DNA of 64,000 bases. It comes from Octopus bimaculoides (lineage: Eukaryota). The stretch's first letter is position 1. Each line of letters starts with the position of its first letter. Location: NCBI RefSeq assembly GCF_001194135.2, contig NC_068996.1, forward strand, positions 47,035,405 to 47,099,404, read 5' to 3'. Shown here in pieces: positions 3,600 through 51,141 of this stretch. Position numbers and translations under genes: made by a program. The notes beneath the pieces were generated by a model that did no database searches, was not told the origin of the DNA, and was given only the letters and a program-made list of their open reading frames with translations.

Positions 3600-4880
3600 C
3601 CTATCCTGTCCGTTCCCTCCTTCAAACGACCCCATAACCTGTGTGACCTCCTGGTCCAGTTTCTTCCCTACTCCCACCTGCCAGCCTGGTTCCTTTCCCT
3701 GCTCCTGCCCACACTGCTTCTACCTCTCCAACACCCCCACCATCCTCACAGGCATCCATCACTGACTCCTTTACCTAGACCTCTAGTAATGTTATTTACT
3801 GCATCTTCAGGTCTCTCTTTTCTTCCCGCTTGTTCTGACTGGTTCGTGGAATACCTCCAAGACATCAAACTCGGCAATGACATCCAGGTCTCGCACTACT
3901 TCCACTCTACTGGTCATTCACTGCAACATCTGTCTGTGTTCAGAATGTCTTCGTTCCTTTGCTCCATATTGGCTCAACTCACCTACTCACTTCATCTGAC
4001 ACCAACCCCACATGAATTCTCACACACTTCTTACATTCAACTGTCCCCTCCACCTACACACCTTCATACCACCTACCTTGGTACCCTCATCATACACAAA
4101 CCACTAAACAAACAACCATACATACTGTTCAACTCATTACTCATTTCACACACCATTACACACACACATACCAACAAACACTTTCCCACTCCACACACAT
4201 TGGCACCAACAACTTCTCAGCACCCACACCACACACAATCTTTAATAGTGTCACCTCACATATCACTATACGTGCAGCCCCACACACTGTTTAACTCAGT
4301 ACACACACCACACACCATCATGCACACTCCCACATCCACACAAGCACATAATACCTGAACACAAACAATATATACATACATGCATAAACATATGCAACAT
4401 GCATAAACACATAACTTTTGCCCACAAGCATACACTATATATATGCACACTAATTGGTCATACACACACACAGACACACACATGCATGTACACTCACCAT
4501 TTGAAAAAGCACATATCAACTGCTACACACAACACACACATTACACATGTACACACACACACACACACGCGCACATGTCAGACTCACTCGCCCCCATTCA
4601 CACATACATACTCATACACACAATTCTCACATACACACACACACACACATGCTCATGCACGTTAGTTTGTTGAGATCACCATTATTATCTTCCTTTCATT
4701 CAACCTCTTTTTTATTATTATCTCCCTTTCATTCAACCTCTTTTTCTCCCAGTCATATGCCATGATGGACCGCTGAACTCTGCACTGTTTTTTTCTCTCT
4801 CTGTATTTTTCATTCTCTCTCCATTTTTTCTTTCTTATTCCTTTCTTTGGAAGAGCGTAGGCTCAAAACATAAATTTGAA
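3600..4880 (+). mobile_element. Degenerate Penelope-like (Neptune-type) 3' remnant: GIY-YIG endonuclease plus terminal repeat region
   Basis: Translations NLCDLLV (3636), TDSFT*TSSNVIYCIF (3761) and DWFVEYLQDIKLGNDIQVSHYFHSTGHSLQHLSV resemble PLE GIY-YIG motifs. The 4755-4875 segment is shared with 13925-14110 and 43945-44090. Confidence 0.65.
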
Positions 4881-6074: not shown

Positions 6075-7324
6075 CAGGGGTTGGACAAAATAATGGAAAT
6101 GCCTTAAAATTTCAAGCAATTTTATTTTAATATGGGGTAGGACCGCTTTTGGCAGTAATTACAGCTTGAATTCTATGAGGTATGAACTCGTACAAAGTTT
6201 GAATTGTTTCCAAAGGAATTTTTGTCCATTCTTCAGCTAAAACAGTCTCCAGTTCTTGTAATGATAATGGTGGAGGATATCGACTCCTTACTTGGTTTTC
6301 TAAAATGTACCATAAATGTTCAATAATATTGAGATCTGGGGACTGTGGTGGCCAGATAAGATGTTCAACTTCATGAGAATGTTCTTCATGCCATTCAGTA
6401 ACAACTTTAGCTGTGTGAATTGGTGCATTATCATCCTGAAAGATTGCATTTTCTTCCGGAAACATTTCCACGACCATAGAATAAATTTGATCAGATAAAA
6501 TGCTTTAATTGTCTTGACTATTAATTCTGCCATGAAGGGAAACCATTGGAAACCCCACTCCCCAGATCATCACAGATCCTCCTCCATCTTTAACAGTTGG
6601 AAGCAAGCAGTCTGGATCAAATGCTTCTTTTGGCTGTCTCCACATGTATACTTGGCCGGGGTAAGAAAAAAGGTAAAGAATGACTTTTCTGAGAAAATAA
6701 TGATCTTCCACTGCTCTAGGGGTCAATTCTGTAGGTTTTTACTCCACTTGAAATACTTTGCAACGTTTGTTTTCGGAAGTGGTGGTTTTCTTATTGCAGC
6801 CCTCCTGTGAAATCCGGCTTTGTGCAGCTCCCAGCGAACAGTTTTTGTGGAAGCTTGGTTCTCGAGGTGGTCATTAAGCTCTGCAGTAATTTTGGGAGCT
6901 GTACTTTTGTGATCCTTTCTAAAAATTCATGTAAGAGTCCAACGATCCCTATCTGAAAGTTTTTGTTTTCTTCCAGAGTTTTGTTTTGACAAGGAGGTTT
7001 TTCTCTCTTTCACAAAGGCTGTCATTACTTTCAAGACAGTACTTTATTATACATTAAACATTTTGGCTGTTTTCATTACGCTATTGTCTGCCATACGAGC
7101 ACCAACAGTTTGACCTATTTGAATGTCTGACAGATCTGTCATTTTAATGAATTTTAATTATCTTTTTCTGATTAAATCTGAAAAGAAACAGCAATTTGAG
7201 CAAAACATATTTAGCAACACTAATAATAAATCAAAAAACATAAAAATAAACAAGCTTTTGATGGTTTTATAGATATCTCAAAATTATAATGCTATGATGT
7301 TAGGTGTTTCTATTATTTTGTCCA
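6075..7324 (-). mobile_element. Tc1-type DNA transposon with DD36E spacing (Incomer-like), transposase pseudogene 6127-7142
   Basis: TA then left TIR caggggttggacaaaataatggaaatgcct; right TIR aggtgtttctattattttgtcca runs into a gap. ORF starts MTDLSDIQIGQTVGARMA with stops and frameshifts; FQDDNAPIH...WPPQSPDLNIIE has 36 residues between D and E. Confidence 0.9.
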
Positions 7325-8039
7325 NNNNNNNNNNNNNNNNNNNNNNNNNNNNNNNNNNNNNNNNNNNNNNNNNNNNNNNNNNNNNNNNNNNNNNNNNNNN
7401 NNNNNNNNNNNNNNNNNNNNNNNNNNNNNNNNNNNNNNNNNNNNNNNNNNNNNNNNNNNNNNNNNNNNNNNNNNNNNNNNNNNNNNNNNNNNNNNNNNNN
7501 NNNNNNNNNNNNNNNNNNNNNNNNNNNNNNNNNNNNNNNNNNNNNNNNNNNNNNNNNNNNNNNNNNNNNNNNNNNNNNNNNNNNNNNNNNNNNNNNNNNN
7601 NNNNATACATACATACATACATACATACATATTTATATGTAATATATTTATGTCTTTGTGTCTGTGTTTGCCCCCCCCCCATCACTTGACAACTGATGTT
7701 GGTATGTTTATGTTCCTGTAACTTAGCAGTTTGGCAATAGAGACTGATAAAATAAATACTAGGCTAGGCCTACAAAGAATAAGTCCTGTGGTTGATTTCT
7801 TTGACTAAAAAAGGAAAACCTTTAAGGCAGTGCTCCAGCATGGCTCAGTCAAAAATGATTGGAACAAATAAAAGAATAAAAGAATAGTATTTCAATTTAT
7901 TGACCTTGGAATGGTGAACAAGAAAGTTAGCCTTGGCAGGATTTGAAACCCAGGACATAAAATGCCCTACCATATACAGCAAGGCATTTTCTTTGATATT
8001 TTTACTGATTCTACCACCTTGTAATATTTACAATAATGG

Positions 8040-8272: not shown

Positions 8273-8893
8273 ATAATGGTGTTTATAAAGTGAGTGTATG
8301 TTGTAATAAGAGAAGATACTTAAAAAAAAAATTTTTTTTAAACAATGGTAGAGGAGAAACAAAAAAAAATGGGGAAAAAAGTCATAACTCTCTCTCTCTC
8401 TCTTTCTTACTATCTCTCTTTGTCTTACTATCTCTCTCTCTCACTCTCTTTCTCTATGTCACTCTTTGTCAGTCTCCTCTGTCACCCCTTTCTATCTGTC
8501 TGTCTCTCTCCCTGTCACTCCCTGTGTGTGTGTGTCTCTCTCTGTTTCAGTCTTTCTCCCTTTTTGTCTGTCTGTCTGTCTTTGTCTGTCTTTGTCTGTC
8601 TCTCTCTTTCTCTCTCTCTCTTTCTCAATCAATCACCCTCGACAAGGTTTAGAAAATGTAATACTATAACCTTCATGTTGGACAAAAGGCTTTGCTATCT
8701 TCGGCTACATTCCTCTGAAATTTAGAGTCTAAAATTTCATTTCCTGAGCTCAAATCTCACACAAGCTCACTTTCTCATTGTGAGATTTAAAAATAGTAAT
8801 TTTCTAATTTATATATCAGTGACTAGTTGTCACTTTGAAAACTATACATTTTGAATGGGAATTTGGCAGTGCCACCTCTAGCCGAACAATTAT

Positions 8894-8938
8894 TCTGTGC
8901 TGATGAAGGGAAATAACCCAGAAATCGCGATACACAGA
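8894..8938 (+). ncRNA. Minimal type I hammerhead ribozyme motif
   Basis: UCUGUG CUGAUGA A-GGG AAAUAA CCC-A GAA AUCGCGAU A^ CACAGA: perfect 6-bp stem I, intact core, palindromic stem III. Confidence 0.75.
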
Positions 8939-9294
8939 TATTGTTTTGAGCTGAGTGGGGGTGCTAGATTCCCTTGTTCGAAAATATAAGGACACAGATC
9001 ATGTCGTATAGCCAGCTGGAAACGATGTCTCCTGGGGCTAAATTACAACAACATTCATCCTAAACCAGGACTGCCATGTTATGATGGCAAACAATCTTTA
9101 CTCCAAGTTCACTTTCATTTTACAGAAGCATGAGTTTGAGTGTGTATGTGAGAGAGGAGGTGGATTGTCAATAAAACAAAAGTACTAATCCAACTATAAC
9201 CCTAACCATCTCGTAAAATTCTTGGCTGTATACCAATGTTATAAATCATTTGTTATATTTTATTTACAATTATGGTATTTTAATTTTCTTGCAG

Positions 9295-9465
9295 CCTGAA
9301 ATCATAAGCAGCTTGATAGTGGTCGATGTTGCTCCATCTGTGAGTCCATCAGTTGATGTGTTTCCATTCTACGCTACGGCAATGAAAAACGTCTCGATAG
9401 ACCCGGCTATGAATATTGTCCAAGCTCGTAAAAGTGTCAGCGATCAGTTACAACCTGTCCTAAAA
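9295..9465 (+). CDS. ABHD11: Internal exon of ABHD11-like alpha/beta-hydrolase (PEIISSLIVVDVAPSVSPSVDVFPFYATAMKNVSIDPAMNIVQARKSVSDQLQPVLK)
   Basis: Polypyrimidine acceptor ttttcttgcag|CCT and donor AAA|gtaagt; 171 bp, phase 0/0. The 57 aa align by eye, without gaps, to the recalled human ABHD11 segment PELVERLIAVDISP...ARKLADEQLSSVIQ. Confidence 0.93.
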
Positions 9466-9994
9466 GTAAGTATAGATCATGATAATGTTGTTGCTGTTAT
9501 TGTTTCTCTTCTCAGGTACATCGTTTTCTCTCTTGAGTTTCCCTGTTATTCATGTTCTTTTATTCTGAGAGCTTCTTTCCTTGAACTGCTTCTTTTCAAT
9601 CGCATCACCATTGTTTTGTTTTCTTCTGGGCTATGATATTTAGTCCTTTAAGATTTCTGTCAATTGACATCTTTTTAATTTGTCAGCCCCTTCCTTTGCC
9701 TTCTTTGTAGTCTTTTACACTATAGTAGGCTCAAGTCTTGTTTGGAACAAAATTGTGTGTATGTGTGTTTATATATATATGAATGTGTGTGTGTGTGTTA
9801 AAATAAGATAACAAGGATAAGGCATTTTATTTTATTTCACCTATATACACTCTCACACAACCTGCCTTAGAATCCTCACTCATGTTATTATTGAATCGGG
9901 AGTTTTACACCGGTCTTTTCATAGCACTCACATAGCCTTGCCTGTCTTGTGGGTCTTCTGGATACCAAAACATCTTATATATATACATATATAT

Positions 9995-10480: not shown

Positions 10481-11459
10481 TGGGGACAGAAGAGAGAGAG
10501 GTAGAGGCAGAGGGACAGAAGAATTAAGGAAGGGTGAGAAAAACTGACAGGGACACAGTGAAGTGAAAAGTGAAGGGAAAGTGAGCAAGAAGAGAAGGCA
10601 GGGAAATGTAAGAGATGGGGAATGACAGAACGAAGAGTGGAATGAACGAAAAAGGGTGAAGGGGCTGATAGACAGAAATAGAGTCATACAAGATTTAGAA
10701 AAATGCATACTTACATATAAGAGACCAAAGTGCACATATGCTGCTATATANNNNNNNNNNNNNNNNNNNNNNNNNNNNNNNNNNNNNNNNNNNNNNNNNN
10801 NNNNNNNNNNNNNNNNNNNNNNNNNNNNNNNNNNNNNNNNNNNNNNNNNNNNNNNNNNNNNNNNNNNNNNNNNNNNNNNNNNNNNNNNNNNNNNNNNNNN
10901 NNNNNNNNNNNNNNNNNNNNNNNNNNNNNNNNNNNNNNNNNNNNNNNNNNNNNNNNNNNNNNNNNNNNNNNNNNNNNNNNNNNNNNNNNNNNNNNNNNNN
11001 NNNNNNNNNNNNNNNNNNNNNNNNNNNNNNNNNNNNNNNNNNNNNNNNNNNNNNNNNNNNNNNNNNNNNNNNNNNNNNNNNNNNNNNNNNNNNNNNNNNN
11101 NNNNNNNNNNNNNNNNNNNNNNNNNNNNNNNNNNNNNNNNNNNNNNNNNNNNNNNNNNNNNNNNNNNNNNNNNNNNNNNNNNNNNNNNNNNNNNNNNNNN
11201 NNNNNNNNNNNNNNNNNNNNNNNNNNNNNNNNNNNNNNNNNNNNNNNNNNNNNNNNNNNNNNNNNNNNNNNNNNNNNNNNNNNNNNNNNNNNNNNNNNNN
11301 NNNNNNNNNNNNNNNNNNNNNNNNNNNNNNNNNNNNNNNNNNNNNNNNNNNNNNNNNNNNNNNNNNNNNNNNNNNNNNNNNNNNNNNNNNNNNNNNNNNN
11401 NNNNNNNNNNNNNNNNNNNNNNNNNNNNNNNNNNNNNNNNNNNNNNNNNNNNNNNNNNN

Positions 11460-11813
11460 TGGAAAGATCACATCACAGAAGATCGAAGAGCTTGGTTGGG
11501 AAAAAATTCCTCATCTACCTTATTCTCCCGACCTTGCCCCTTCAGACTACCACTTGTTTCGTAGCTTACAGAATCATTTGGGGGACATAACTTTCGCAAG
11601 CCAGGAGGAGGTCGAAACTGACAATTCAGAGTTCTTCGCTTTGAAACCAAAAGAGTTTTACATTGATGGGATTAAAAAGCTTGTAAATAGATGGAAGGAA
11701 GTCATAGATAATCAGGGAAAGTACATTGATGATTAAATTTCAATTAAATATATCATTTGATCACTTGTTTTCTTTATTCAAAATTCGGACAGAACTTATG
11801 GAATGACCTGATA
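11460..11813 (+). mobile_element. Mariner transposon 3' end (5' part lost or in gap)
   Basis: ELGWEKIPHLPYSPDLAPSDYHLFRSLQNHL...GIKKLVNRWKEVIDNQGKYIDD* followed by TIR ...gaacttatggaatgacctgata+TA. Confidence 0.9.
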
Positions 11814-23078: not shown

Positions 23079-23489
23079 TGCAGGAATAACAACGGTGGTT
23101 TCTAATTTAAGTTCAAAGCTGTAAATTTTGGCAAGCTGGCACTTGTTTGATTGGATTGATCCAAGTATTTGACTCATACTTAATTTTATTGACTCTCGCT
23201 TTATTTTATTGTTCCATCTATTATTTAACATGTGCAGCATGTTAAATGATAGATGGAACACACTATCCAAACCTCTTACCAGCGACTGTTGCCCAGAGTT
23301 GCTTTACCTGATTCACCCAATTAAATAATATCAATGCTACCTACATAACATTCCAAATTGTTAATCATTAGACTATCAGATTACTTCCTACTGCTGGCTT
23401 TCTTAGATATCCGATCTGGTACTAGGTGTAGTTTATTATATAACTCCCTCTTCCTTTGAACTCCTTAAAGTTAAGTAGTACACTATTAT

Positions 23490-24090
23490 TACTAACAAAA
23501 AACTGTGTATACTCCATCCCATGCAGCTGTGGTAGGTTATACAAAGGCGAAACATGCCGCCCCCTCAAAATAAGGGTAGAAGAACATCGCAAAGCTGTGA
23601 CACGAGGAGATATTGATAAATCAGGTATAGCTGATCATGTATGGAAAAATGGAGACCACCTCCCCCTGTGGGATGATGTTAAAATAATAAACAGAGAACA
23701 CCACTGGGAAATACGAAAACTAAAAGAAGCAGCACATATGCTAGGACACAACAACCTCCTAAGCAGGCCGAGTGCAGATAAGAATAGCACATGGGAACCG
23801 GTGTTAAGGAAGGATAGGAAAATATTAGATTTATTAGCCCTAAAATTCACTCTATAATTGCCCATGGACATATGGCGTAGTGGTTAAGAACGCAGGCTGA
23901 ATAATAGTAATAATAATATTAATAATAATAATAACTATAACTTCAAAAAATACCTTAGGAATGAGAACCCAGGTTCAAAATTTCCCCATGACACCTGATG
24001 AAGGTTGGAGGGTATATCAGCCGAAACGTTATGAGGATAAACAAAATGAGGACAAATATCCATTAAATGAAAATAATGTAGATAATGTAT
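23490..24090 (+). mobile_element. Penelope-like element 3' end: GIY-YIG endonuclease C-terminus plus terminal repeat
   Basis: KNCVYSIPCSCGRLYKGETCRPLKIRVEEHRK...SGIADHVW...EHHWEIRKLKEA is a PLE GIY-YIG with C-x-C and H...H; followed by A/B-box-like motifs and a hammerhead core. Confidence 0.85.
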
Positions 24091-28604: not shown

Positions 28605-28914
28605 ATACAAATAATATGTGAGTATATGCGTATATACGTACATGTATGTACATACCTACATCTACATGTATATATAGATGCATAACTGGGTACAGGACGT
28701 CACAAAAAAATAAATGTGGACAAAATGAAAAACAAGAATATAAACAAAGCATGGAAAACAAACTTTTTTCGGACAACGGTAGGAACACACAGGAAAACAG
28801 ACAGGCTACATAGAGAACATTTCCTTCATCAGCAGCCCCTATTCTAAACTAAGCGTTTCGAAGTGNNNNNNNNNNCCTTCATCAGCAGCCCCTATTCTAA
28901 ACTAAGCGTTTCGA

Positions 28915-28976
<62 letters not shown>

Positions 28977-29670: not shown

Positions 29671-29960
29671 ACAACTCTACAGTTAAGGTAGGATTGTTTT
29701 TACAAGAAATTTACATTTAGTAACTGAAATGACCCTTGCATATTCATTAAATCTGCAACCCACCCCACAGGTGTTACTCACGAGTGAGTATGAGTGTGAG
29801 AATGAACTTGAATATGATTTGGTAATATGTACCATGTTTCTACTAATTATTTTGGGTACGTATGTAGTTATGAACTGACACAGGTACCCAACCAACCCTG
29901 TCACTCTTGACTCAGTAGAGCGTCTAGGTTGTGATAGCTAAATAGATAGATAGATAGATG

Positions 29961-29991
<31 letters not shown>

Positions 29992-29994
29992 GGA

Positions 29995-30043
<49 letters not shown>

Positions 30044-30935: not shown

Positions 30936-30995
30936 ATTACATATCAATTGATTTCAGGATTAAAGGGAAACTCCTTTTTCCATCATCAGTGTAAT
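30936..30995 (-). ncRNA. Type I hammerhead ribozyme motif within a ~499-bp tandem unit
   Basis: AUUACA CUGAUGA U-GGA..AAAGG AGUUUC CCUUU..UCC-U GAA AUCAAUUGAU A^ UGUAAU: perfect 6-bp stem I and a 10-nt palindromic stem III. Confidence 0.75.
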
Positions 30996-31620: not shown

Positions 31621-31744
31621 TGTACAGAGGGACGATGCAGAAATAAGACAATGACATATGTAGGCGAAACAGCAAGGAGCATAGGGGAGCGGGCAAACGA
31701 ACATTGGAGGGAACTTAAGGAAGGGAAGAACTCATCAGTTCTGT
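31621..31744 (+). mobile_element. PLE GIY-YIG endonuclease fragment running into a gap
   Basis: CTEGRCRNKTMTYVGETARSIGERANEHWRELKEGKNSSVL (YVGET..R..EH motif). Confidence 0.75.
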
Positions 31745-33664
31745 NNNNNNNNNNNNNNNNNNNNNNNNNNNNNNNNNNNNNNNNNNNNNNNNNNNNNNNN
31801 NNNNNNNNNNNNNNNNNNNNNNNNNNNNNNNNNNNNNNNNNNNNNNNNNNNNNNNNNNNNNNNNNNNNNNNNNNNNNNNNNNNNNNNNNNNNNNNNNNNN
31901 NNNNNNNNNNNNNNNNNNNNNNNNNNNNNNNNNNNNNNNNNNNNNNNNNNNNNNNNNNNNNNNNNNNNNNNNNNNNNNNNNNNNNNNNNNNNNNNNNNNN
32001 NNNNNNNNNNNNNNNNNNNNNNNNNNNNNNNNNNNNNNNNNNNNNNNNNNNNNNNNNNNNNNNNNNNNNNNNNNNNNNNNNNNNNNNNNNNNNNNNNNNN
32101 NNNNNNNNNNNNNNNNNNNNNNNNNNNNNNNNNNNNNNNNNNNNNNNNNNNNNNNNNNNNNNNNNNNNNNNNNNNNNNNNNNNNNNNNNNNNNNNNNNNN
32201 NNNNNNNNNNNNNNNNNNNNNNNNNNNNNNNNNNNNNNNNNNNNNNNNNNNNNNNNNNNNNNNNNNNNNNNNNNNNNNNNNNNNNNNNNNNNNNNNNNNN
32301 NNNNNNNNNNNNNNNNNNNNNNNNNNNNNNNNNNNNNNNNNNNNNNNNNNNNNNNNNNNNNNNNNNNNNNNNNNNNNNNNNNNNNNNNNNNNNNNNNNNN
32401 NNNNNNNNNNNNNNNNNNNNNNNNNNNNNNNNNNNNNNNNNNNNNNNNNNNNNNNNNNNNNNNNNNNNNNNNNNNNNNNNNNNNNNNNNNNNNNNNNNNN
32501 NNNNNNNNNNNNNNNNNNNNNNNNNNNNNNNNNNNNNNNNNNNNNNNNNNNNNNNNNNNNNNNNNNNNNNNNNNNNNNNNNNNNNNNNNNNNNNNNNNNN
32601 NNNNNNNNNNNNNNNNNNNNNNNNNNNNNNNNNNNNNNNNNNNNNNNNNNNNNNNNNNNNNNNNNNNNNNNNNNNNNNNNNNNNNNNNNNNNNNNNNNNN
32701 NNNNNNNNNNNNNNNNNNNNNNNNNNNNNNNNNNTAATAATAATATATATTCTCCGATTTGAAGTGACAATTTTTAAATACTTACAAAGCCTTTCTGGCT
32801 TGTTTACAAATATTATATATGTGTGTGTGTGTGCACATGCATGTGTGTGTGTATATGTGTGTGTATAAAGTTCATAAAAGAAAATGTAGAAGAAAAAATA
32901 TAATAGATGCTTGGTTCATTTTGTTTGTATCACAATGGAAAAGTAATGCAAATTAAAAGAGATACCTATAAGAATAAGTATAAAAGGAACCAGATCAACA
33001 AAACAACCAAAAAATATCCGATAAAATCCTACACATGTTTCAATCCGACAATATGTTTGAATCATCGATATTCTGACTGTTATAGATGTAATAAACGATA
33101 TATTGTCGTATATGTTCGGGAAAAAAGTAAGTGTATTTTCCGGTCTTGAATTATGAAATAACTTATTTTGAAATTTTCAAATGTAAACAACAATTTATTA
33201 AGATGTAGAGTTCATGTGATTAGAAATTGATCATTTAAAATTTACCTATTATTGAATGTGGAAATGTTGCTATAACATCAAATTCATTTGAAAAATATAT
33301 CTATACTTATCTTTATAATATATTTATAAAAGTTTATGGAAGGAAGATGGTAGAGAAACAAATGTAACTTAACATGATGGGTGTAATATACACAGAATTA
33401 GATTGAGAAATGTTTATAAAGATGGAATGAAAAGTTTGTTTATATTACACTACGATAATGTTTTTTAGAATTACTACATTGAAATATTATAACATTGGTG
33501 TTATTTGCTAACGATCACATTGGTGCTATTTACGTGCCACTGTCACAAAAGCCACACAGCTGCTCTGGCAACAATCATGCTCGGACGGTGCTCTTAGTGC
33601 TCCACTGGTACAGGTGTCATCACGATTTTGCTTTTGCATGCCCCAACAGGACTTCGCAAGCCTG

Positions 33665-33735
<71 letters not shown>

Positions 33736-33946
33736 AGCAATGTTAAATCTCTGAACGAGGTATTAACAGTAACTGCACGATAAAGTGAAGTATATTTGCC
33801 ACTTAAATGTGGCTGACCTCGAGGGGTGGATGTTACTGTTGCTTTTAGCCCCAGGAGGACATCTCCTCCAGCTGGCTATCGACACACTTCTGTGTCCTGT
33901 CTGTATTTGCCAAGGGAAGTTATCCTTCCCATCTTGATCTACGATA

Positions 33947-33991
33947 CGTACGTACTCGAGTTTCAGGGTTATTTCCCTTCTTCAGCGTATG
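33947..33991 (-). ncRNA. Minimal type I hammerhead ribozyme motif
   Basis: CAUACG CUGAAGA AGGG AAAUAA CCCU GAA ACUCGAGU A^ CGUACG: 4-bp stem II, palindromic stem III, stem I 5 of 6 bp. Confidence 0.75.
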
Positions 33992-34234
33992 ACAATCGCC
34001 GACCTTCGATGCAAAAGGCATCCCTGAAAAAGGGAAATAACTCTGAAATTCAATTTATTAAAAATTAAAATTAAATTAAGTTTCACAGTATAATATATAA
34101 ATATATAGTTTTAGAGAAAAGAACCAAAGTTCATGAACTAATCCATGAAAATCCAGTCACATATAGAAAAATTAATAATTAAAAGCACAATAAATAAGTT
34201 TAATATAATACAAAGTAAATATCATAAGATAATG

Positions 34235-34713: not shown

Positions 34714-35105
34714 TCATTTATCTTGTTGACTGTCTGGTGGTTGGTTGTCATTATTTTCAAATTTAATTTTATGTGTGTATCCTGCTTTAGCTAATGCTGA
34801 GTTATTATAGTCCTTATTAATATTAAAGATTTCTTTGTTAGATGAGAAGTAAGTAATGCTGTGTTGAATATTTTTAACTAAACATTTAGTTATCATTTTG
34901 GGATGATTACTATCATGATTAATATATGTTGAATTTGAATTAGGTTTGTAATATGGTGCATGGTTGCCTGTGAGTAGGTTAAAGTTGGCATCTAAAAACT
35001 TCATGGAACTATGCTCGTTTTCTACAGAAATTTTCAGGCCAAACATATTAAAGAATCTATGAAATTTTTTCTTGTAATTTCCTAATTTTCTGTTACTTGT
35101 AGATT
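34714..35105 (-). mobile_element. PLE reverse-transcriptase thumb remnant
   Basis: KFLDANFNLLTGNHAPYYKPNSNSTYINHDSNHPKMI...SSNKEIF...ALAKAGY matches the FLD...KP...YI...SNHP...GY pattern of PLE RT C-termini. Confidence 0.75.
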
Positions 35106-35106
35106 T

Positions 35107-36020
35107 CATCATCATCATCATCATCATCATCGTTTAACGTCAGCTTTCCATGCTAGCATGGGTTGGACGATTTGACTGAGGACTGGTGAAACCGGATGGC
35201 AACACCAGGCTCCAATCTAAATTTGGCAGAGTTTCTACAGCTGGATGCCCTTCCTAATGCCAACCACTCAGAGAGTGTAGTAGGTGCTTTTACGTGTCAC
35301 CTGCACGAAGGCCAGTCAGGCGATACTGGCAACGGCCACGCTCGAAATGGTGTCTTTTATGTGCCACCCACACAAGCCAGTCCAGGGGCACTGGCAACGA
35401 TCTCGCTCGAAAATCCTACGAAGGCCAGTCAGGCGGTACTGGCAACNNNNNNNNNNNNNNNNNNNNNNNNNNNNNNNNNNNNNNNNNNNNNNNNNNNNNN
35501 NNNNNNNNNNNNNNNNNNNNNNNNNNNNNNNNNNNNNNNNNNNNNNNNNNNNNNNNNNNNNNNNNNNNNNNNNNNNNNNNNNNNNNNNNNNNNNNNNNNN
35601 NNNNNNNNNNNNNNNNNNNNNNNNNNNNNNNNNNNNNNNNNNNNNNNNNNNNNNNNNNNNNNNNNNNNNNNNNNNNNNNNNNNNNNNNNNNNNNGCCTAC
35701 CTCTTCCACAGGTTCCCTCAACTGTTAGGGTGTGGCACTTTTTCACGCAGCTATCCTCATCCATTCTCACCACATGTCCATACCAGCGCAATCGTCTCTC
35801 TTGCACACCACAACTGATGCTTCTAATGTTCAGCTTTTCTCTCAAGATACTTACACTCTGACGGGTATTCACATTGACATTACACATCCAACGGAGCATA
35901 CTGGCTTCATTCCTTGCGAGCTTACGCATGTCCTCAGCAGTTACAGCCCATGTTTCACTGCCATGTAGCATGACTGTTCGTACACATTTCACTGCCATGT
36001 AGCATGGCTGTTCGTACACA
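35107..36020 (-). mobile_element. 5'-truncated RTE-clade LINE (RT C-terminus plus 3'UTR, spanning a gap)
   Basis: VRTVMLHGSETWAVTAEDMRKLARNEASMLRWMC...RRLRWYGHVVRMDEDSCVKK...GRGR; family D tail ending in (GAT)n at 35107. Confidence 0.88.
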
Positions 36021-36696
36021 ATTTAATTATAAATAATGCATCGTCTCTATATAATCCTCTGGCTATTTCTGGAAATTCATTATTGAACTTGTACAGAATA
36101 TAAATTCCTACAATATCAGTGACCTGAGTTCAATCAGTCGATCCCTTGGGTATATCAAAGTAACTGGGTGTGTCCTTTCTAGTCCAGTATTTCTTGTCAA
36201 ATTTGATTAACGATTTTCTAGCTGTAAGAATGATATTAATTTCTTTGTGAGACAAGTTGGTATGACCTATAGCAAATATTAAGGCACTATTTAATACTAC
36301 GAGATTTATAGAAGAATAATAATCATTAATATCTACCTGTATAAATCTATGTTTATCCTCATTATCTATTCTGTTACACCAATTTATAACTTATTGAGTA
36401 CTAAACCAGAGCTCTAATAGAGGTTATATTGAGTACTAAGTGATAGTTCTAATAGTTCATAAGTTGGACTATATATTTATCCAAAATTAATTTACTTAAT
36501 TCACCTATGTCTGATTTTGCTGGGCAAATAAGTCTAACTTTAGGATCAGTAAAAAGAAATTTGATTTATGGTCTTTAAAGGATATTCTAGGGCTAAGAGG
36601 GACAGGTCATCAAATTATATTCTGTCATTATTTTTTTACACTTAAGATTAATGTTTCTAAGTACTTATATCTTTGTAGTAATTTCCTTGTGCATAA

Positions 36697-40249: not shown

Positions 40250-41716
40250 CTAAGGGTGTAAACCCACCAACATTGCTAGAGATAAGAGCTAAAATGCTCT
40301 AATGCTGTAGGAGAAGCACATAAATGTGCACGTATGAGGTCTGATCAACAAGTATGTGGAAAGTTGCCATAGTAATGAAGCTAAAACATGCAGAGTGAAG
40401 CTGCTTCGTACAGATTGACTTTGAACTTTGCTGTGCATGCACACTAAGTTTTAACATTCTAGCTCACTTCCGCTGTTTACAGCAGTGCTTGGAAGGGAGG
40501 TGTGTAGTGTGTGATTGTTGCATTTACTATGACAAAGTTGAGCAGAGAATCTGCATCAAATGTTGCCAAAAGCTTGGCGATGCCTGCTCAGAGGCCTACA
40601 CAAAGTTTTGAAAAAGTATTCATCATTCTCAACACAACCAAGGAGATTTTGTGCAACTGAAACCTGTCTCTTTGGTCAGCTGAAAGCAGTTTTGGCACAA
40701 ACCTGGCAGACATGCATCTCATACCCAAATCTTCAGTGATAAAACTCACAGATGGTGATTTGATGATTTCCTCTCACAGCTGCACGCATATCTACAATGC
40801 TTTTCTCAGTTCTGCTGGTTGCGGGTCTCCCAGAATGTTTGTCAATATCGACATTTTTTTGGCCATCTTAGAAATGTCTGAACCACATGTACACTCGTGT
40901 GTGGTTCATACACTCCTCTTCATGCACTATCTGCAACTTTGCATCAACCTCTGAGCAGGTATTGCGATGACAACTTTCTCTGTCATGGTCAATGCGACAA
41001 TCACATGCTACACACCTTTCTTCCAAGCCCTGCTGTAAACAGCAGAAGTGAGCTAGAATGTCAAGACTTAGTGCACATACACAGCAGAGTTAATTTTTGC
41101 CAAGCAGCTTCACTCTGCATGCTTTAGCTTTATTACTATGGCAACAGTCTGGCTATTGTTGATCAGACCTCGTATACTCTCATAGGTGTTGTAATCACAC
41201 AAAACACTGACTCAAGAATTTCTTTGACAGAACGTCCAGTTTCAGCTATTTCCGTAGCCTTCATCAGTAAGGATCACTCATTTTGCTGATTCCAGGCCAA
41301 TCCTCCTGTCACCAAATATGCATTTACCATAAAAATTTATGAGTGGTTTAGTGGATCACTGATGTGTATAGAAAAATTAATATAAACAGCCATGCACAAT
41401 GTGATACCATAAAGGAAAGGTATAAACATCACACTGTGCACGGCTGTGTATATTAAATTTTTGTATACACATTAGTGATCCACTAAATCATCCATAAATT
41501 TTTATGGTAAATGCGTATTTGGTGACAGGAGTATATATACTGATAGTGGATTAAGCCTGGAAATAACTGAACAAGCGGTCCTGCTGATGAAGGCTAGAGA
41601 AATAGCTAAAACTGAACATTCTGTGAGCATATGTGTGTATATTTATGTGGTTTTCCTATAGCATTAAAGCATTTTAGCTCTTATTTCTAGCAATGTAGGT
41701 GTCTTGGCACACTTAA
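40250..41716. repeat. Large imperfect palindrome (PLE-terminal-repeat-like), left arm interrupted by the mariner foldback
   Basis: acattgctagagataagagctaaaatgctc (40270) versus gcattttagctcttatttctagcaatgt (41670); inner arms centred at ~41413. Confidence 0.8.
40335..41172. mobile_element. Mariner-derived foldback element made of two 5' arms
   Basis: TA-flanked; both ends read (C/T)GAGGTCTGATCAA; ~270-bp inverted arms; the left arm encodes KVEQRICIKCCQKLG (+) and the right arm encodes ...SGRP...MSARFVPKLLS (-). Confidence 0.85.
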
Positions 41717-44143: not shown

Positions 44144-45399
44144 CTATCTGTTGGGACCTTTTTGTTGCATGTGTATGTGTCTGTATGTTGTGATGCATAT
44201 GTTTGACTCTCCTTAGCTCAGTAGTTACAACTGTTACTGACATACAGGTGGTGTCCTTCGTTTCCAGTCTTTCTGTATAAACATGTTGGGCATTGGCAAA
44301 ATATCATCTTACTTGGAAACAAGTGAGGTGTTGGTGATGGGAAAATCTGCATCATTGAATTCCATCTGATGCATGGAAGCTTGCAAACCTTCATATTAAA
44401 ATGATGATGATGAGGGAGAAGAAGATATAAGTATATCTATTTATTATTAGTGATGCAAACAGTATTAGTCTCAAAATAGCATTCTGCATATATCTTACCT
44501 CACTCAGATATGTTGTTGAAAGCCACAAAACTGTAGTATTCCTCTTAAGGAAAAATGAGTGATAAAATGCACAGAAGTAAATCAGTAGCAGACGGTGATA
44601 GATTTGCTAAATCATGATTTCAAAATCATTTTTGAGAATCATCAGCAGTAAGAATCGACTTATCAGCTGCATTCTTAGGCGAATTTCTTGATTTACCAAT
44701 TCCACTGCTTCTGCTGAACAATTTTGATCTACTGCTGATATACTTACTCTTTTACTTGCTTCAGTCATTTGACTGCAGCCATGCTGGAGCACTACCTTTA
44801 GTCGAGCAAATCGACTCCAGGACTTATTCTTTGTAAGCCTAGTACTTAATCTATTGGCCTCTTTTGCCGAACTGGTAAGTTACGGGGACGTAAATGCACC
44901 ACCACCAGTTGTCAAGTGATGTTGCGGGGGACAAGCACAGACACACAAACACATACACATACATACATACACACATACATATATATATATATATGTAAAT
45001 GTATAAAAATAAAAAGATAAAGAGAGCAATGGTAAGGTTGGAGAAGTATTTTATGGATAGAGTCTTACAGCTGTTTCTGGGAAGATCCAGTACTTCCCTT
45101 CNNNNNNNNNNNNNNNNNNNNNNNNNNNNNNNNNNNNNNNNNNNNNNNNNNNNNNNNNNNNNNNNNNNNNNNNNNNNNNNNNNNNNNNNNNNNNNNNNNN
45201 NNNNNNNNNNNNNNNNNNNNNNNNNNNNNNNNNNNNNNNNNNNNNNNNNNNNNNNNNNNNNNNNNNNNNNNNNNNNNNNNNNNNNNNNNNNNNNNNNNNN
45301 NNNNNNNNNNNNNNNNNNNNNNNNNNNNNNNNNNNTTAATGGTCAGTTGATCTTACAGGATAGAGGGGATGAGCATATAGAGAGAAGGAGGAATGGGGG

Positions 45400-47499: not shown

Positions 47500-48125
47500 C
47501 ATCACGATTTCGCTTTCGTTTGCCCCAACAGGTCTTCGCAAGCCGAGTTTCATGTCCAATGAAGGAAACGTTGGGATGGGTGCCAGTCATTGAATTTAGT
47601 TCGATTTCGATTTCACTTGCCTCAACAGGTCTTCCCAAACGGAGTTTAGTGTCCAATGAAGGAAAGGTACGCATAAGTGGGCTGGCTATACCCCTGGTAG
47701 AGGCCTTGGATTTAGGTCTCACTTGGCTTGCTGGGTCTTCTCACCCACAGCATATTTACAAAGGTCTTGGTCAGAAGTCATTGCCTCGGTGAGGCCCAAT
47801 GTTCGAAGGTCGTGCTTCACCACCTCATCCCAGGTCTTCCTGGGACTACCTCTTCCACAGGTTCCCTCCACTGCTAAGGTGTAGCACTTTTTCACACAGC
47901 TGTCCTCATCCATTGTTGCCACATGACCATACCAGTGCAAGATACTTACACTCTGTCGAGTATGCACACTGACATTACACATCCATCGGAGCATACTGGC
48001 TTCATTCCTTGTGAGCCTACGCATGTCCTCAGCAGTCACAGCCCATGTTTCACTGCCATGTAGCATGGCTGTTCGTACACATGCATCATACAGTCTGCCT
48101 TTTACTCTGAGAGGCCCCTTGTCAC
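47500..48125 (-). mobile_element. 5'-truncated RTE LINE with internal deletion and tandem ~90-bp 3'UTR repeats
   Basis: LRVKGRLYDACVRTAMLHGSETW...GRGSPRKTWDEVVKHDLRTLGL...QAK*; ...aacaggtcttc...gtccaatgaaggaaa occurs twice at 47500-47670. Confidence 0.88.
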
Positions 48126-49100
48126 AAGCTTAGCTGCGTGGAGGTGTTTGTCTCTCTTTTGTAAACATAAGGACACAGGAAATGTGTCAAGAAGCGGTGC
48201 AGCTTCCTAGGCCTAACGAACAGTAGTATTATTCCCTTCAGGGGCCTGTCACATTAAGTTGACAGCATACAACTACTTCAAATTTTATTGTGTCTAGAGA
48301 GAGTCATTATGCCAATATTAATATCACATACACTGGATCAATTCCACTCCTTTATTATTAGTCAATTGGTTAAATATCCATTGTTTGTTAAATATCCAAC
48401 TAATAATCAATCATGGGATTGAACCAGTGCATGTGTGAATAATATTGGCATATTGACTCTCTCTGGACAACAAAATTTGATAGAAATGTTCCATCATTAT
48501 TCCTTGTGCTGATATGTGGGTTGGAGAACCTGATTGTTAATCAGAAGGCATGGAAGTCCATGCACTTCCAAAGTGAACATAGGAGACTACATGAAGAGAG
48601 GAGGTAACGTCCACTCCTATGAAAAACAATGTGCTGGAAGTGGAGGAGAATGAGTGTCCTGGATTGATGCTGTCATCCCGTTTGATGGACCATCATAAGC
48701 AAGTAAACAAGGATTCCAAAGCAGATGACATTGCATACAGCTGTAGCAATGACATCACGTTGCAGTTGTGGGTAGTGTCATGATGACATTCTTGGACAGT
48801 TGCTGATTATATGTGTTATGTCCTCCACTGAAGAGTTGCATGATTGTTACTTGTGGTTGCATTTGGGGATTTTAAAGTTTTCATGATATATTTTGTAGCT
48901 ATCTCCTGCTCTTGAATTTCAAAAGCACAGCCTTTGAAATATGATGTAACGGTCATGAGTCCAAGAGAGGCTATACTTTATGGTGTTTTGGAACTACATT
49001 GTTACAAAGTCAATTTTTAACTGCACAGTTCTGCTTGTGCCTATCACACATGATTTTCAAGTCTAAGTCTTCAGAATGTTTATTGTGGATCTGGCACATA

Positions 49101-50959: not shown

Positions 50960-51141
50960 GACACAACATTACGTCAGTTCATTCTTACAAATCTGGTCGA
51001 GAAAGAAGGAACGGTACAGTGGCGCCTAAATCTTGATGCCATTATTACAGATTTCAAAGAGATCATGGCTTTTCCAGAGTGTGGCAATAGTTATCAGGGA
51101 CCAACTCTGTTTTTAGGCGGACAAAACTCTAATTACATTGG
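50960..51141 (+). CDS. ABHD11: Next exon of ABHD11-like hydrolase (DTTLRQFILTNLVEKEGTVQWRLNLDAIITDFKEIMAFPECGNSYQGPTLFLGGQNSNYI+GG)
   Basis: Acceptor ttcattgtag|GAC and donor GG|gtatgt; 182 bp, phase 0/2, in frame with 9295-9465. Matches the recalled human DMAVRQHLLTNLVEVDGRFVWRVNLDAL...YLGPTLFLLGGNSQFV. Confidence 0.95.

What the first reader, a model, noticed from the sequence alone, without database searches (positions are those of the whole stretch)
8894..8938. Structurally complete hammerhead in sense orientation ~360 nt upstream of an ABHD11 splice acceptor
It has a perfect stem I (UCUGUG/CACAGA), intact CUGAUGA and GAA, an AUA cleavage triplet (after 8932), palindromic AUCGCGAU with CpGs retained, and an A.A mismatch at the base of stem II. 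If this region is intronic, the motif is transcribed in every pre-mRNA. A single minimal copy probably needs dimerisation to cleave, so it may be inert; if active it could cut the intron just before the branch-point region and affect splicing kinetics.
Basis: partly seen in the sequence, partly recalled or inferred. Interest (0 to 1): 0.75.

Follow-up and report, generated by a model that had tools for sequence, protein, structure and literature searches.

The report
Transposon-borne hammerhead ribozyme in an intron
The hammerhead ribozyme motif is real, but it belongs to a roughly 240-base mobile-element repeat (the Penelope-like / retrozyme kind) scattered through this octopus-like genome, and this lone intronic copy is most likely an inactive passenger, not a splicing regulator.

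Summary
The motif at 8894-8938(+) is exactly as described: helix I UCUGUG/CACAGA, CUGAUGA, GAA, palindrome AUCGCGAU, A17 and an A.A at the base of helix II. My descriptor expects 0.003 such hits per shuffled window.

It is not a one-off. It heads a ~240-nt dispersed repeat. Related copies lie at 33787-34020(-), 48132-48285(+, ribozyme part missing), 30936-30995(-) and 45066-45101(-). Two more copies lie in an Octopus bimaculoides chromosome (L001).

Across five ribozyme copies, 95.6% of pair positions stay paired and 12 of 14 pairs show compensatory changes. The helix III palindrome changes sequence but stays palindromic.

The architecture is the known dimer-dependent type I hammerhead of Penelope-like elements and animal retrozymes. 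Copy B lies just 3' of a decayed Hydra-clade Penelope-like RT, and the copies sit in (TA)n in inverted arrangements.

The ABHD11-like intron and sense context holds: the exon is 9295-9465 and the cleavage site is 362 nt upstream. This copy has no partner palindrome in 64 kb, is predicted to misfold as a monomer, and has A.A where relatives pair. It is probably inert.

This is a new member of a known kind. Orthologous conservation could not be tested.

The parts
8861..9104 (+). Copy A: the whole ~240-nt hammerhead-bearing repeat unit. It starts about 29-33 nt upstream of helix I, contains the ribozyme, and carries a ~170-nt conserved tail.
   Evidence: Self-BLAST 8899-9042 against 33986-33844, E 9e-12. 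nhmmer profile hits. Alignments A1, A2 and A5 with copies B, C, F and G.
8884..8946 (+). Extended hammerhead. It comprises an outer stem (8884/8886-8890 with 8940-8944/8946), an internal loop (5' UAU 8891-8893 opposite U8939) and the 45-nt core motif.
   Evidence: RNAalifold consensus and single-sequence folds. Pair counts: 19 pairs, 94.7% paired, 7 compensatory. The same 3x1 loop (UAU/UGU opposite U) is seen in B, F and G.
8894..8899 (+). Helix I, 5' strand UCUGUG. It pairs with 8933-8938 CACAGA.
   Evidence: All 6 helix I pairs show compensatory changes among the 5 copies.
8900..8906 (+). Catalytic core C3-U4-G5-A6-U7-G8-A9.
   Evidence: Invariant in A, E and F. B has the allowed N7 variant CUGAAGA.
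8907..8920 (+). Helix II: A.A (8907/8920), then GGG/CCC, with loop AAAUAA.
   Evidence: Relatives have A-U (B) or U-A (F, G) at the first pair.
8921..8923 (+). Core G12-A13-A14.
8924..8931 (+). Helix III palindrome AUCGCGAU (A15.1 to U16.1). As a monomer it gives only 2 bp plus a CGCG loop. As a dimer it gives an 8-bp intermolecular helix.
   Evidence: Self-duplex -10.1 kcal/mol. Homodimer -29.5 against 2 x -10.3 kcal/mol. The palindrome is unique in the window. Other copies have ACUCGAGU, AUCAAUUGAU, ACAGCUGU, ACAUGU or the wobble-containing AUAUGU.
8932..8933 (+). A17 followed by C1.1: the predicted cleavage site (between 8932 and 8933).
   Evidence: Position follows from hammerhead numbering applied. 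Cleavage was not tested.
8933..8938 (+). Helix I, 3' strand CACAGA.
9295..9465 (+). ABHD11-like exon (57 codons, PEIISSLIVVDVAPS...LQPVLK). The acceptor AG is at 9293-9294 and the donor GTAAGT at 9466-9471.
50960..51141 (+). Next ABHD11-like exon (DTTLRQFILTNLVEKEG...). The intron between the two exons is about 41.5 kb.
33787..34020 (-). Copy B of the repeat unit. Its hammerhead is at 33991-33947: CAUACG CUGAAGA AGGG AAAUAA CCCU GAA ACUCGAGU A CGUACG. (TA)n follows its 3' end.
34022..34055 (+). Inverted, degenerate fragment of the hammerhead (CUGAAAA A GGG AAAUAA CUC U GAAAU) abutting the 5' end of copy B. It forms a hairpin with copy B.
   Evidence: Sub-threshold miRNA-like Rfam hits caused by this hairpin.
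48132..48285 (+). Copy C: the tail of the repeat unit only, with the hammerhead part missing. It is 87-90% identical to the O. bimaculoides copies F and G.
   Evidence: nhmmer E 5.8e-7. Alignments A2 and A5 and the identity table.
30936..30995 (-). Hammerhead E: a related complete motif with a long helix II and a 10-nt palindrome (AUUACA CUGAUGA U[GGA...UCC]U GAA AUCAAUUGAU A UGUAAU).
   Evidence: Covariance model R1, 29.6 bits, E about 3e-6. Sequence.
45066..45101 (-). Hammerhead D: the 3' two-thirds of a related motif (..GA A GGG..CCC A GAA ACAGCUGU A). The 5' part is lost in assembly gap 45102-45335.
34717..35106 (-). Remnant of a Penelope-like-element RT (thumb region, Hydra-clade type), about 726 nt upstream of hammerhead B on the same strand.
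   Evidence: 1983 homologues, best E 1.5e-28. Motifs in the long homologues match the clade description. tblastn. The best hits are named as Octopus bimaculoides and O. sinensis proteins.
36004..36600 (-). Upstream part of the same RT remnant (about residues 180-368 of the homologues). It is separated from the thumb part by a ~900-nt insertion that holds a LINE-like RT fragment and an assembly gap.

Best explanation
The motif is the ribozyme of a solo copy (about 8861-9104) of a ~240-nt hammerhead-bearing retroelement repeat. The copy landed in sense orientation in an intron of an ABHD11-like gene.

The family's ribozyme is a type I hammerhead. It has a 6-bp helix I closed by an internal loop and an outer stem, a 4-bp helix II, and a very short helix III made of a palindrome. 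This is the architecture of Penelope-like-element (PLE) and animal non-LTR retrozyme hammerheads.

In the transposon's life cycle, two units on one transcript would pair their palindromes into an extended helix III (a double hammerhead). Each would then cut after H17 and release unit-length RNA for reverse transcription by a PLE RT/GIY-YIG enzyme, with insertion at microsatellites such as (TA)n.

Shown here:
- the fold and its covariation;
- the palindromic helix III in every copy;
- the dispersed, inverted and partly tandem arrangement of copies in (TA)n;
- the adjacency of one copy to a Hydra-clade PLE RT remnant.

Inferred from the literature: cleavage, dimer dependence, any circularisation, and mobilisation by PLEs.

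At this locus the copy is most likely an inert or extremely slow passenger. It is alone, has no partner palindrome nearby, its lowest-energy fold sequesters the core, and it has A.A where its relatives have a Watson-Crick pair.
For: (1) Homologous copies exist. Copy A aligns with 33986-33844(-) at E 9e-12. A profile finds copy C at 48132-48280, E 5.8e-7. It also finds two units in O. bimaculoides L001 at E 2e-14 and 7e-12.

(2) Covariation supports the fold. For A against B, 14 pairs are 92.9% paired with 6 compensatory changes, against 0 in slid controls. With the outer stem there are 19 pairs, 7 compensatory. For five copies, 95.6% of cells are paired, 12 of 14 pairs are compensatory, and 0 of 500 shuffles reach the observed score.

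(3) Helix III is AUCGCGAU, ACUCGAGU, AUCAAUUGAU, ACAGCUGU, ACAUGU or AUAUGU in different copies. The sequence changes, but it is self-complementary in every copy; AUAUGU needs a U.G wobble.

(4) The predicted homodimer is -29.5 kcal/mol against -20.6 for two monomers. The monomer hammerhead fold is -4.9 against an MFE of -10.3 that pairs core UGAU with AUCG.

(5) Published PLE and metazoan hammerheads share these traits: helix I of 6 bp, helix II of 4 bp, helix III of 1-2 bp capped by a palindromic loop, action as dimers, no detectable cleavage by single motifs, mostly solo dispersed copies, and pairs on opposite strands 100-700 bp apart (PMC4209133).

(6) PLE hammerheads lie near the 3' end in pseudo-LTRs, often with an inverted truncated copy beside them. 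Hydra-clade PLEs insert in (TA)n and carry hammerheads (PMC8557442).

(7) Copy B begins about 60 nt after the expected end of a decayed Hydra-type ORF on the same strand and is followed by (TA)n. The L001 copies are head-to-head, with a partial tandem copy, and (TA)n on both sides.

(8) ATCGCGAT occurs only once in the window.
Against: - No Rfam hammerhead model matches, even at E<=10.
- The 10.1-11.1 pair is not the conserved G-C (A.A, A-U or U-A).
- No head-to-tail tandem of complete units was seen, so the dimer substrate was not observed.
- The endonuclease part of the adjacent PLE ORF is not detectable, and an inverted fragment separates copy B from it. The link to the Hydra clade therefore rests on position only.
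- B, F and G (and probably A) start at the same point, 29 nt upstream of helix I. This fits a discrete short element better than random 5' truncation.
- Only five ribozyme copies were available, and the five-copy alignment was fitted to a model built from two of them.
- Cleavage was not tested, and some dimer-type hammerheads cleave slowly as monomers (axolotl, PMC7229834).
Confidence: 0.8

Rival explanations
1. Exapted intronic ribozyme. The sense copy is kept by selection and cuts the nascent ABHD11-like pre-mRNA about 360 nt before the acceptor, as a slow monomer or a trans dimer. This would tune splicing or transcript fate, as proposed for the amniote intronic hammerheads in RECK, CTCL and DTNB.
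For: - It is in sense orientation in an intron.
- The core, helix I and outer stem are fully intact, although the unit's tail is only about 60-63% identical to other copies in the five-way alignment, or 73% to copy B in the pairwise BLAST.
- It is the only complete sense-strand hammerhead in the window.
- There is precedent for domesticated retroelement hammerheads in introns (PMC6155905).
Against: - It has A.A at 10.1-11.1 where relatives pair.
- Helix III cannot form stably in a monomer, and the MFE sequesters the core.
- There is no cis partner.
- Single PLE-type motifs showed no detectable cleavage in vitro (PMC4209133).
- Divergence between copies reflects different source subfamilies, so an intact motif need not mean selection after insertion.
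- No cross-species data are available.
Confidence: 0.04
2. Discrete non-autonomous element. The ~240-nt unit is a retrozyme-like short element in its own right, mobilised in trans by PLEs and possibly through circular RNA. It would not be the 5'-truncated 3' end or pseudo-LTR of an autonomous PLE. This is a variant of the main explanation, not an opposite.
For: - B, F and G begin at the same point, 29 nt upstream of helix I, and A probably does too.
- The unit length of about 240 nt lies within the 170-400 nt range of animal retrozymes (PMC7229834).
- A 2026 preprint derives animal retrozymes from PLE pseudo-LTRs.
- No coding sequence adjoins A, C, F or G.
Against: - No head-to-tail tandem of complete units was found in about 73 kb of non-gap DNA from the window and L001.
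- Copy B sits where a PLE 3' end is expected.
- The sample is too small.
Confidence: 0.35
3. Chance match: a core-like sequence with fortuitous flanking complementarity in AT-rich intronic DNA.
For: - A Gb-sized genome would contain on the order of 100 chance hits at 0.003 per 64 kb.
- Rfam models do not recognise the motif.
Against: - Homologous copies keep all helices through 12 compensatory pair changes, and the palindrome is retained with different sequences.
- Related complete motifs E and F have perfect 6-bp helices I of unrelated sequence.
Confidence: 0.01

Closest known systems
Hammerheads of Penelope-like elements (Cervera & de la Pena 2014, PMC4209133), including the Hydra clade (Craig et al. 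2021, PMC8557442)
   Same: - Type I topology, with a palindromic and very short helix III that implies a dimeric (double-hammerhead) mode.
- An extra or odd nucleotide right after A9.
- High sequence variability with covariation between copies.
- Mostly solo dispersed copies, plus pairs on opposite strands a few hundred bp apart.
- Location 3' of an RT ORF (copy B).
- Insertion at (TA)n with inverted or partial-tandem copies.
   Different: - Helix I is 6 bp with an internal loop and a closing stem, and helix II is only 4 bp. The published minimal PLE motifs have helix II of 6-8 bp and helix I of 4-5 bp. On this point the family looks like the 'canonical' metazoan type I form.
- The nucleotide after A9 pairs with a partner before G12 (A-U or U-A), so 10.1-11.1 is not G-C.
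- No intact RT-EN ORF is attached to any sampled copy.
Animal non-LTR retrozymes and satellite hammerheads (newt satellite 2, axolotl, Schistosoma Sm-alpha, mussel, coral; PMC7229834)
   Same: - Short (170-400 nt), AT-rich, non-coding units, each with one type I hammerhead.
- Helix I of 6 bp and helix II of 4 bp.
- In amphibians, a helix III too short for monomer activity, so that dimers cleave.
   Different: - Retrozymes are defined by head-to-tail tandem arrays and abundant circular RNAs. Only solo, inverted and partial copies were seen here, and no RNA data were available.
- The conserved loop nucleotides of the canonical tertiary contact could not be checked.
Amniote intronic hammerheads (Rfam HH9 and HH10; RECK, CTCL, DTNB introns; reviewed in PMC6155905)
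   Same: A type I hammerhead of retroelement ancestry lying in sense orientation inside an intron of a protein-coding gene.
   Different: - Those motifs are single-copy and ultraconserved across orthologous introns, and they have a stable fold.
- This one is a member of a multi-copy repeat, has a dimer-type helix III and an A.A mismatch, and does not match the HH9 or HH10 models.
- Its orthologous conservation is unknown.
Viroid and satellite double hammerheads (ASBVd)
   Same: An unstable helix III that is stabilised only when two copies pair, which restricts cleavage to multimeric RNA.
   Different: Those act in replicating RNA pathogens of plants and mostly have type III topology. This one is DNA-encoded in an animal genome.

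Membership tests
Hammerhead ribozyme (type I) | Core C3-U4-G5-A6-N7-G8-A9 between helices I and II | tested here: met
   CUGAUGA at 8900-8906. The same box, or the allowed N7 variant, is in copies B, E and F.
Hammerhead ribozyme (type I) | G12-A13-A14, then A15.1...U16.1 and a non-G residue at 17 before helix I | tested here: met
   GAA at 8921-8923, A8924...U8931 and A8932. H17 is A, A, A, C and U in the five copies.
Hammerhead ribozyme (type I) | Three helices around the core, supported by covariation | tested here: met
   95.6% of cells paired, 12 of 14 pairs compensatory, 0 of 500 shuffles as high, and slid controls show 0-2. Caveat: the five-copy alignment was fitted to a model built from two of the copies.
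Hammerhead ribozyme (type I) | Conserved G10.1-C11.1 pair closing helix II | tested here: not met
   A.A in copy A, A-U in B, U-A in F and G, U.U in E. G-C is the second pair. If the first nucleotide is read as the PLE-type extra base after A9, an unusual extra base remains before G12.
Hammerhead ribozyme (type I) | Match to an Rfam hammerhead covariance model (RF00163, RF00008, RF02275, RF02276, RF02277) | tested here: not met
   No hammerhead hit at gathering score over the whole window, nor at E<=10 on 701 nt, 341 nt or 65 nt.
Hammerhead ribozyme (type I) | Site-specific self-cleavage giving 2',3'-cyclic phosphate and 5'-OH ends | not testable with these tools
   Needs in vitro transcription or end mapping.
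PLE-associated / dimeric metazoan hammerhead | Helix III reduced to 1-2 bp with palindromic sequence, allowing an extended intermolecular helix III | tested here: met
   Self-complementary helix III sequences of 6-10 nt in all six copies that include helix III; AUAUGU in F needs a U.G wobble. Self-duplex -10.1 and -10.7 kcal/mol; homodimer favoured by about 9-11 kcal/mol.
PLE-associated / dimeric metazoan hammerhead | Multi-copy families within a genome, with sequence heterogeneity and compensatory changes | tested here: met
   Copies A, B, C, D and E in the window and F and G in L001.
PLE-associated / dimeric metazoan hammerhead | Location in the pseudo-LTR / 3' region of an element encoding RT plus GIY-YIG endonuclease | tested here: inconclusive
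   Copy B lies 726 nt downstream of a Hydra-type RT thumb remnant on the same strand, about 60 nt after the expected ORF end. However, the EN domain is not detectable and an inverted fragment intervenes. A, C, F and G have no adjacent ORF.
PLE-associated / dimeric metazoan hammerhead | Insertion in microsatellites with inverted or partial-tandem copies | tested here: met
   (TA)n follows copy B. F and G plus a partial copy lie between (TA)n tracts, with 240-nt arms 95% complementary. For copy A itself only a CT-rich microsatellite about 270 nt upstream is seen.
Animal non-LTR retrozyme | Head-to-tail tandem arrays of 170-400-nt units, each with a hammerhead | tested here: not met
   No complete tandem was found in the window or L001. 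There is only one partial tandem, 3942-4055 followed by G in L001.
Animal non-LTR retrozyme | Expression as unit-length linear and circular RNAs | not testable with these tools
   No RNA data were available.
Domesticated intronic hammerhead (HH9/HH10 type) | Conservation at the orthologous intron across species | not tested
No orthologous locus could be fetched.
Domesticated intronic hammerhead (HH9/HH10 type) | Stable monomeric active fold | tested here: not met
   The hammerhead fold is -4.9 kcal/mol against an MFE of -10.3 that pairs core residues with the helix III strand.

The most novel reading that the evidence does not exclude
The sense intronic copy retains enough activity, as a slow monomer helped by the helix I internal loop or as a trans dimer at the transcription site, to cut nascent ABHD11-like pre-mRNA 362 nt before the acceptor, and has been kept for that. 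This would be an invertebrate counterpart of the amniote intronic hammerheads. A milder reading, not excluded either, is that this ~240-nt unit is an undescribed, abundant octopus retrozyme family expressed as small circular RNAs.
Probability: 0.04. Interest if true: 0.7.

Novelty: new member of a known kind. Interest (0 to 1): 0.3.

Why it matters
The result turns a single suspicious motif into a ribozyme family supported by covariation in a cephalopod-type genome. It gives the unit boundaries and several variants.

The family mixes traits of two published classes. It has the 6-bp helix I and 4-bp helix II of the 'canonical' metazoan type I hammerhead, and the PLE-style context and dimer-type helix III. 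It replaces the conserved G10.1-C11.1 pair with A-U or U-A. This makes it a useful test case for what that pair contributes.

I found no paper in the held library that describes hammerheads or retrozymes in octopus. A genome-wide census and a look for circular RNAs in octopus tissues would therefore be new, though expected in kind.

For ABHD11 itself the most likely consequence is none. Many such units lie in both orientations in its introns.

Tried and rejected
- Rfam scans at gathering score and at E<=10 found no hammerhead hit. The sub-threshold miRNA-like hits at 33954-34055 come from the hairpin formed by copy B and its inverted fragment.
- The protein search with the 57-aa exon peptide found no candidate, so orthologous ABHD11 loci could not be fetched. 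The PDB search with the same peptide found nothing, and Pfam found nothing for the exon.
- The word-indexed protein search with the RT-thumb fragment found nothing. The exhaustive HMMER search then found 1983 relatives.
- Pfam did not recognise the short PLE-like ORFs even at E<=10. Among ten long homologues it gave only a sub-threshold RVT_1 hit in one, plus unrelated transporter domains (MFS_1, Sugar_tr) in another. Clade assignment therefore rests on motifs read in the sequences against the published description.
- Exact-pattern scans for CTGANGAAGGGAAATAACCCNGAAA in the metagenome, viral and prokaryotic collections gave 0 hits.
- ARAGORN found no tRNA-like part, so this is not a tRNA-derived SINE.
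- Other CTGATGA...GAAA sites were examined and rejected as complete hammerheads: 23995(+), 28885(-), 41267(-)/41584(+), 44645(-) and 55444(+). The sites at 23995, 28885 and 41267/41584 share the CTGATGA-A-GG start and may be decayed PLE hammerheads.
- O. sinensis locus L002 held no significant copy.
- A search for the upstream nucleophile-motif exon and the C-terminal exon of ABHD11 in the window found nothing. Intronic status is inferred from the internal position of the 9295-9465 exon in the protein.
- A MAFFT alignment of A, B, F and G was gapless and misplaced the 2-nt shorter helix III. The model-guided alignment was used instead.
Full report
**1. Observation**

The 45 bases at 8894-8938(+) read UCUGUG CUGAUGA A-GGG-AAAUAA-CCC-A GAA AUCGCGAU A CACAGA.
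- a perfect 6-bp helix I;
- both conserved core boxes;
- A15.1/U16.1 flanking an 8-nt palindrome;
- A17 at 8932;
- an A.A opposition at the base of helix II.

A hammerhead descriptor of my own found only this site and one other in the whole window. The descriptor requires CUGANGA, 0-1 nt, a helix II of at least 3 bp, 0-1 nt, GAAA, up to 10 nt, U, H, and a helix I adjacent to the core. In 2000 dinucleotide-preserving shuffles it hit 0.003 times per window with helix I of at least 6 bp, and 0.0185 times with at least 4 bp. That is unlikely for one window. It would still allow roughly a hundred chance hits in a Gb-sized genome, so the motif alone proves little. No Rfam hammerhead model reports it, at gathering score or at E<=10 even when only 65 nt are searched.

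**2. It is part of a repeat**

A self-BLAST of the flanks matched 8899-9042 to 33986-33844 on the minus strand (73% identity, E 9e-12). The alignment shows a second hammerhead, copy B, at 33991-33947(-): CAUACG CUGAAGA AGGG AAAUAA CCCU GAA ACUCGAGU A CGUACG. It is followed by the same ~170-nt tail, with conserved blocks such as GGACACAGA and ATAGCCAGCTGGA...CCTGGGGCTAAA.

A profile of the two copies found a third, more diverged tail-only copy at 48132-48280(+) (E 5.8e-7). A covariance model built from A and B and run without filters found three more pieces:
- **Hammerhead E**, 30995-30936(-). It is complete and related: AUUACA CUGAUGA U[GGA...UCC]U GAA AUCAAUUGAU A UGUAAU.
- **Hammerhead D**, 45101-45066(-). 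It is cut by an assembly gap and has the palindrome ACAGCUGU.
- **An inverted fragment**, 34024-34055(+). It is degenerate and abuts copy B.

**3. Covariation**

Between A and B the core and helix II are almost identical. Helices I and III differ at most positions yet remain paired. Of 14 pairs, 92.9% of cells are paired and 6 pairs changed on both sides, against none when the 3' partners are slid by 1-3 columns.

In A, B, and the copies F and G described in section 5, helix I is followed by a 3x1 internal loop (5' UAU or UGU opposite a single U). A closing stem of different sequence follows: ACAAU/AUUGU in A and CGAU/AUCG in B, with a 3-bp UGC/GCA stem read by eye in F and G. RNAalifold predicts this for A and B. 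The count is 19 pairs, 94.7% paired and 7 compensatory.

With five ribozyme copies aligned to the model (A, B, E, F, G), 95.6% of cells pair and 12 of 14 pairs show compensatory changes. None of 500 shuffles reaches the observed score, and slid controls give 0-2 compensatory pairs. The caveat is that this alignment was fitted to a model built from two of the copies.

Helix III is AUCGCGAU, ACUCGAGU, AUCAAUUGAU, ACAGCUGU, ACAUGU or AUAUGU in different copies. The sequence changes, but helix III is self-complementary in every copy; AUAUGU needs a U.G wobble. This is a genuine, selected RNA structure at the level of the repeat family.

**4. Which kind of hammerhead**

The literature describes exactly this design. 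Most metazoan type I hammerheads have helix I of 6 bp, helix II of 4 bp, and a helix III of 1-2 bp capped by a small palindromic loop. This prevents efficient monomer cleavage but lets two copies form an active dimer. PLE hammerheads show the following traits (PMC4209133):
- families full of covariation;
- an extra nucleotide after A9;
- palindromic 15.2-16.2 positions;
- mostly solo dispersed copies;
- pairs on opposite strands 100-700 bp apart;
- no detectable cleavage by single motifs in vitro.

PLE hammerheads lie near the 3' end in pseudo-LTRs, often next to an inverted 5'-truncated copy. The Hydra clade of PLEs carries hammerheads and inserts in (TA)n (PMC8557442).

Folding agrees with dimer dependence. 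The hammerhead fold of monomer A is -4.9 kcal/mol, while the MFE (-10.3) pairs core UGAU with AUCG of helix III. The homodimer, with an 8-bp intermolecular helix III, is -29.5 against -20.6 for two monomers.

**5. Link to Penelope-like elements**

An ORF remnant at 35106-34717(-) lies 726 nt upstream of hammerhead B on the same strand. It has 1983 homologues in an exhaustive HMMER search (best E 1.5e-28). Long homologues carry these motifs:
- an RWR/RWK-like motif, DKT and YRDDG;
- a CxCx5C linker;
- a C-terminal GIY-YIG-like domain without CCHH.

These are the diagnostic traits published for the Hydra clade. tblastn places residues of about 180-368 at 36600-36004 and about 352-499 at 35106-34717, split by a ~900-nt insertion. 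The ORF would end near 34050, and hammerhead B starts at 33991. The endonuclease part is not recognisable, so this link is positional.

The best homologues are annotated proteins of Octopus bimaculoides and O. sinensis. The O. bimaculoides locus (L001) contains two complete units of the same family:
- F, 4066-4305(+), and G, 3845-3606(-), with profile E 7e-12 and 2e-14;
- the two are 95% alike and lie head to head;
- a partial third copy lies between them, and (TA)n flanks both sides.

Copy C of the window is 87-90% identical to F and G. B, F and G all start 29 nt upstream of helix I, and A probably does too. This fits a discrete short element (a retrozyme-like derivative of a PLE pseudo-LTR, compare the 2026 preprint) at least as well as random 5' truncation. 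I leave that open.

**6. Gene context**

The exon is 9295-9465, with acceptor ...ttcttgcag|CCT and donor GTAAGT at 9466. It translates to PEIISSLIVVDVAPS...LQPVLK. This exon and a second one at 50960-51141 align colinearly with residues 149-211 (E 3e-6) and 212-271 (52% identity, E 2e-15) of human ABHD11. I recalled the human sequence from memory, so the name is a lead and the alignment is computed.

Because the exon encodes an internal part of the protein and has an AG acceptor, the hammerhead lies in the preceding intron on the sense strand. Its cleavage site is 362 nt upstream of the acceptor. The upstream exon is not in the window. Copies B, D and E lie antisense in the following 41.5-kb intron.

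**7. What this copy does**

The most likely answer is nothing.
- It is solitary.
- Its palindrome ATCGCGAT occurs only once in 64 kb, so no double hammerhead can form in cis within the window.
- Its monomer fold is disfavoured.
- Position 10.1-11.1 is A.A where B, F and G have a Watson-Crick pair.

A slow monomer reaction or a trans dimer cannot be excluded, because some dimer-type hammerheads cleave weakly alone (PMC7229834). The exaptation reading, which parallels the amniote intronic hammerheads (PMC6155905), gets about 4%.

**8. Novelty and limits**

Hammerheads in PLEs and animal retrozymes are well known. I found no report of them in octopus in the held library. This family combines canonical helix lengths with a non-G-C 10.1-11.1 pair. 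I therefore rate it a new member of a known kind, of modest interest.

Not done:
- Orthologous intron comparison.
- Any cleavage or RNA evidence.
- A genome-wide census.

Noticed in passing
window 30936-30995 (-): A second kind of complete hammerhead (E). It has a perfect 6-bp helix I (AUUACA/UGUAAU), a long imperfect helix II, a U.U at its base and a 10-nt palindrome AUCAAUUGAU. Its flanks do not match the A/B repeat tail.
   Followed up: partly
window 45066-45101 (-); L001 16725-16770 (+) and 16350-16395 (-): Another subfamily with helix III palindrome ACAGCUGU. The window copy is cut by assembly gap 45102-45335. The L001 pair is degenerate, on opposite strands and about 375 nt apart.
   Followed up: partly
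window 23456-23857 (+) and 23995-24035 (+): An ORF with a GIY-YIG-like motif (VYSIPCSCGRLYKGETCRPLKIRVEEH) that looks like a canonical PLE endonuclease. A hammerhead-like core follows 138 nt later (CUGAUGA A GGUUG...CAGCC GAA ACGU) with almost no helix I. Pfam did not recognise the ORF.
   Followed up: partly
window 31651-31744 (+): A short ORF start, MTYVGETARSIGERANEH, that is also GIY-YIG-like. It runs into assembly gap 31745-32734.
   Followed up: no
window 41209-41340 and 41460-41631: Arms of an inverted repeat, each carrying a hammerhead-like core (CTGATGAAGGCTA..GAAATAGCTGAAAC on the minus arm; the plus arm has GAA mutated to AAA). Neither has a helix I. They may be decayed PLE motifs on opposite strands.
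   Followed up: partly
window 28840-28920 (-): The same ~45-nt sequence (CACTTCGAAACGCTTAGTTTAGAATAGGGGCTGCTGATGAAGG) appears on both sides of a 10-N gap. It looks like an assembly duplication and contains a CTGATGAAGG box.
   Followed up: no
window 33954-34055: Sub-threshold Rfam miRNA-precursor hits on both strands (MIR399 34.2 bits against a gathering score of 57; mir-2041; MIR1508). They are caused by the hairpin between hammerhead B and its inverted fragment, so they are not evidence of a miRNA.
   Followed up: yes
window 6127-6477 (-) and about 11460-11736 (+): Tc1/mariner-type transposase remnants. The first has a DDE_3 Pfam hit, E 1.8e-13. The second is recognised only by eye.
   Followed up: partly
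window 35429-36019 (-) and 47719-48066 (-): Two similar LINE-like RT C-terminal fragments (MLHGSETWAVTAEDMR...RRLRWYGHV). The first interrupts the Hydra-type PLE remnant and the second abuts repeat copy C.
   Followed up: no
window 8385-8625 (+): A CT-rich microsatellite-like tract about 270 nt upstream of copy A. It is similar to 29944-30043 on the minus strand.
   Followed up: no
window, 19 runs of N (8154 bases in all): There are many assembly gaps (for example 7325-7604, 10751-11459 and 45102-45335). Repeats next to gaps, including hammerhead D, are truncated by the assembly and not by biology.
   Followed up: yes
window 8997-9033 and 33894-33857 (-): Within the conserved tail, UAGCCAGCUGG...CCUGGGGCUA can form a hairpin. 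In copy B the inner part is a perfect GGAGGA/UCCUCC stem. It may be a second structured element of the unit, but it was not tested for covariation.
   Followed up: no
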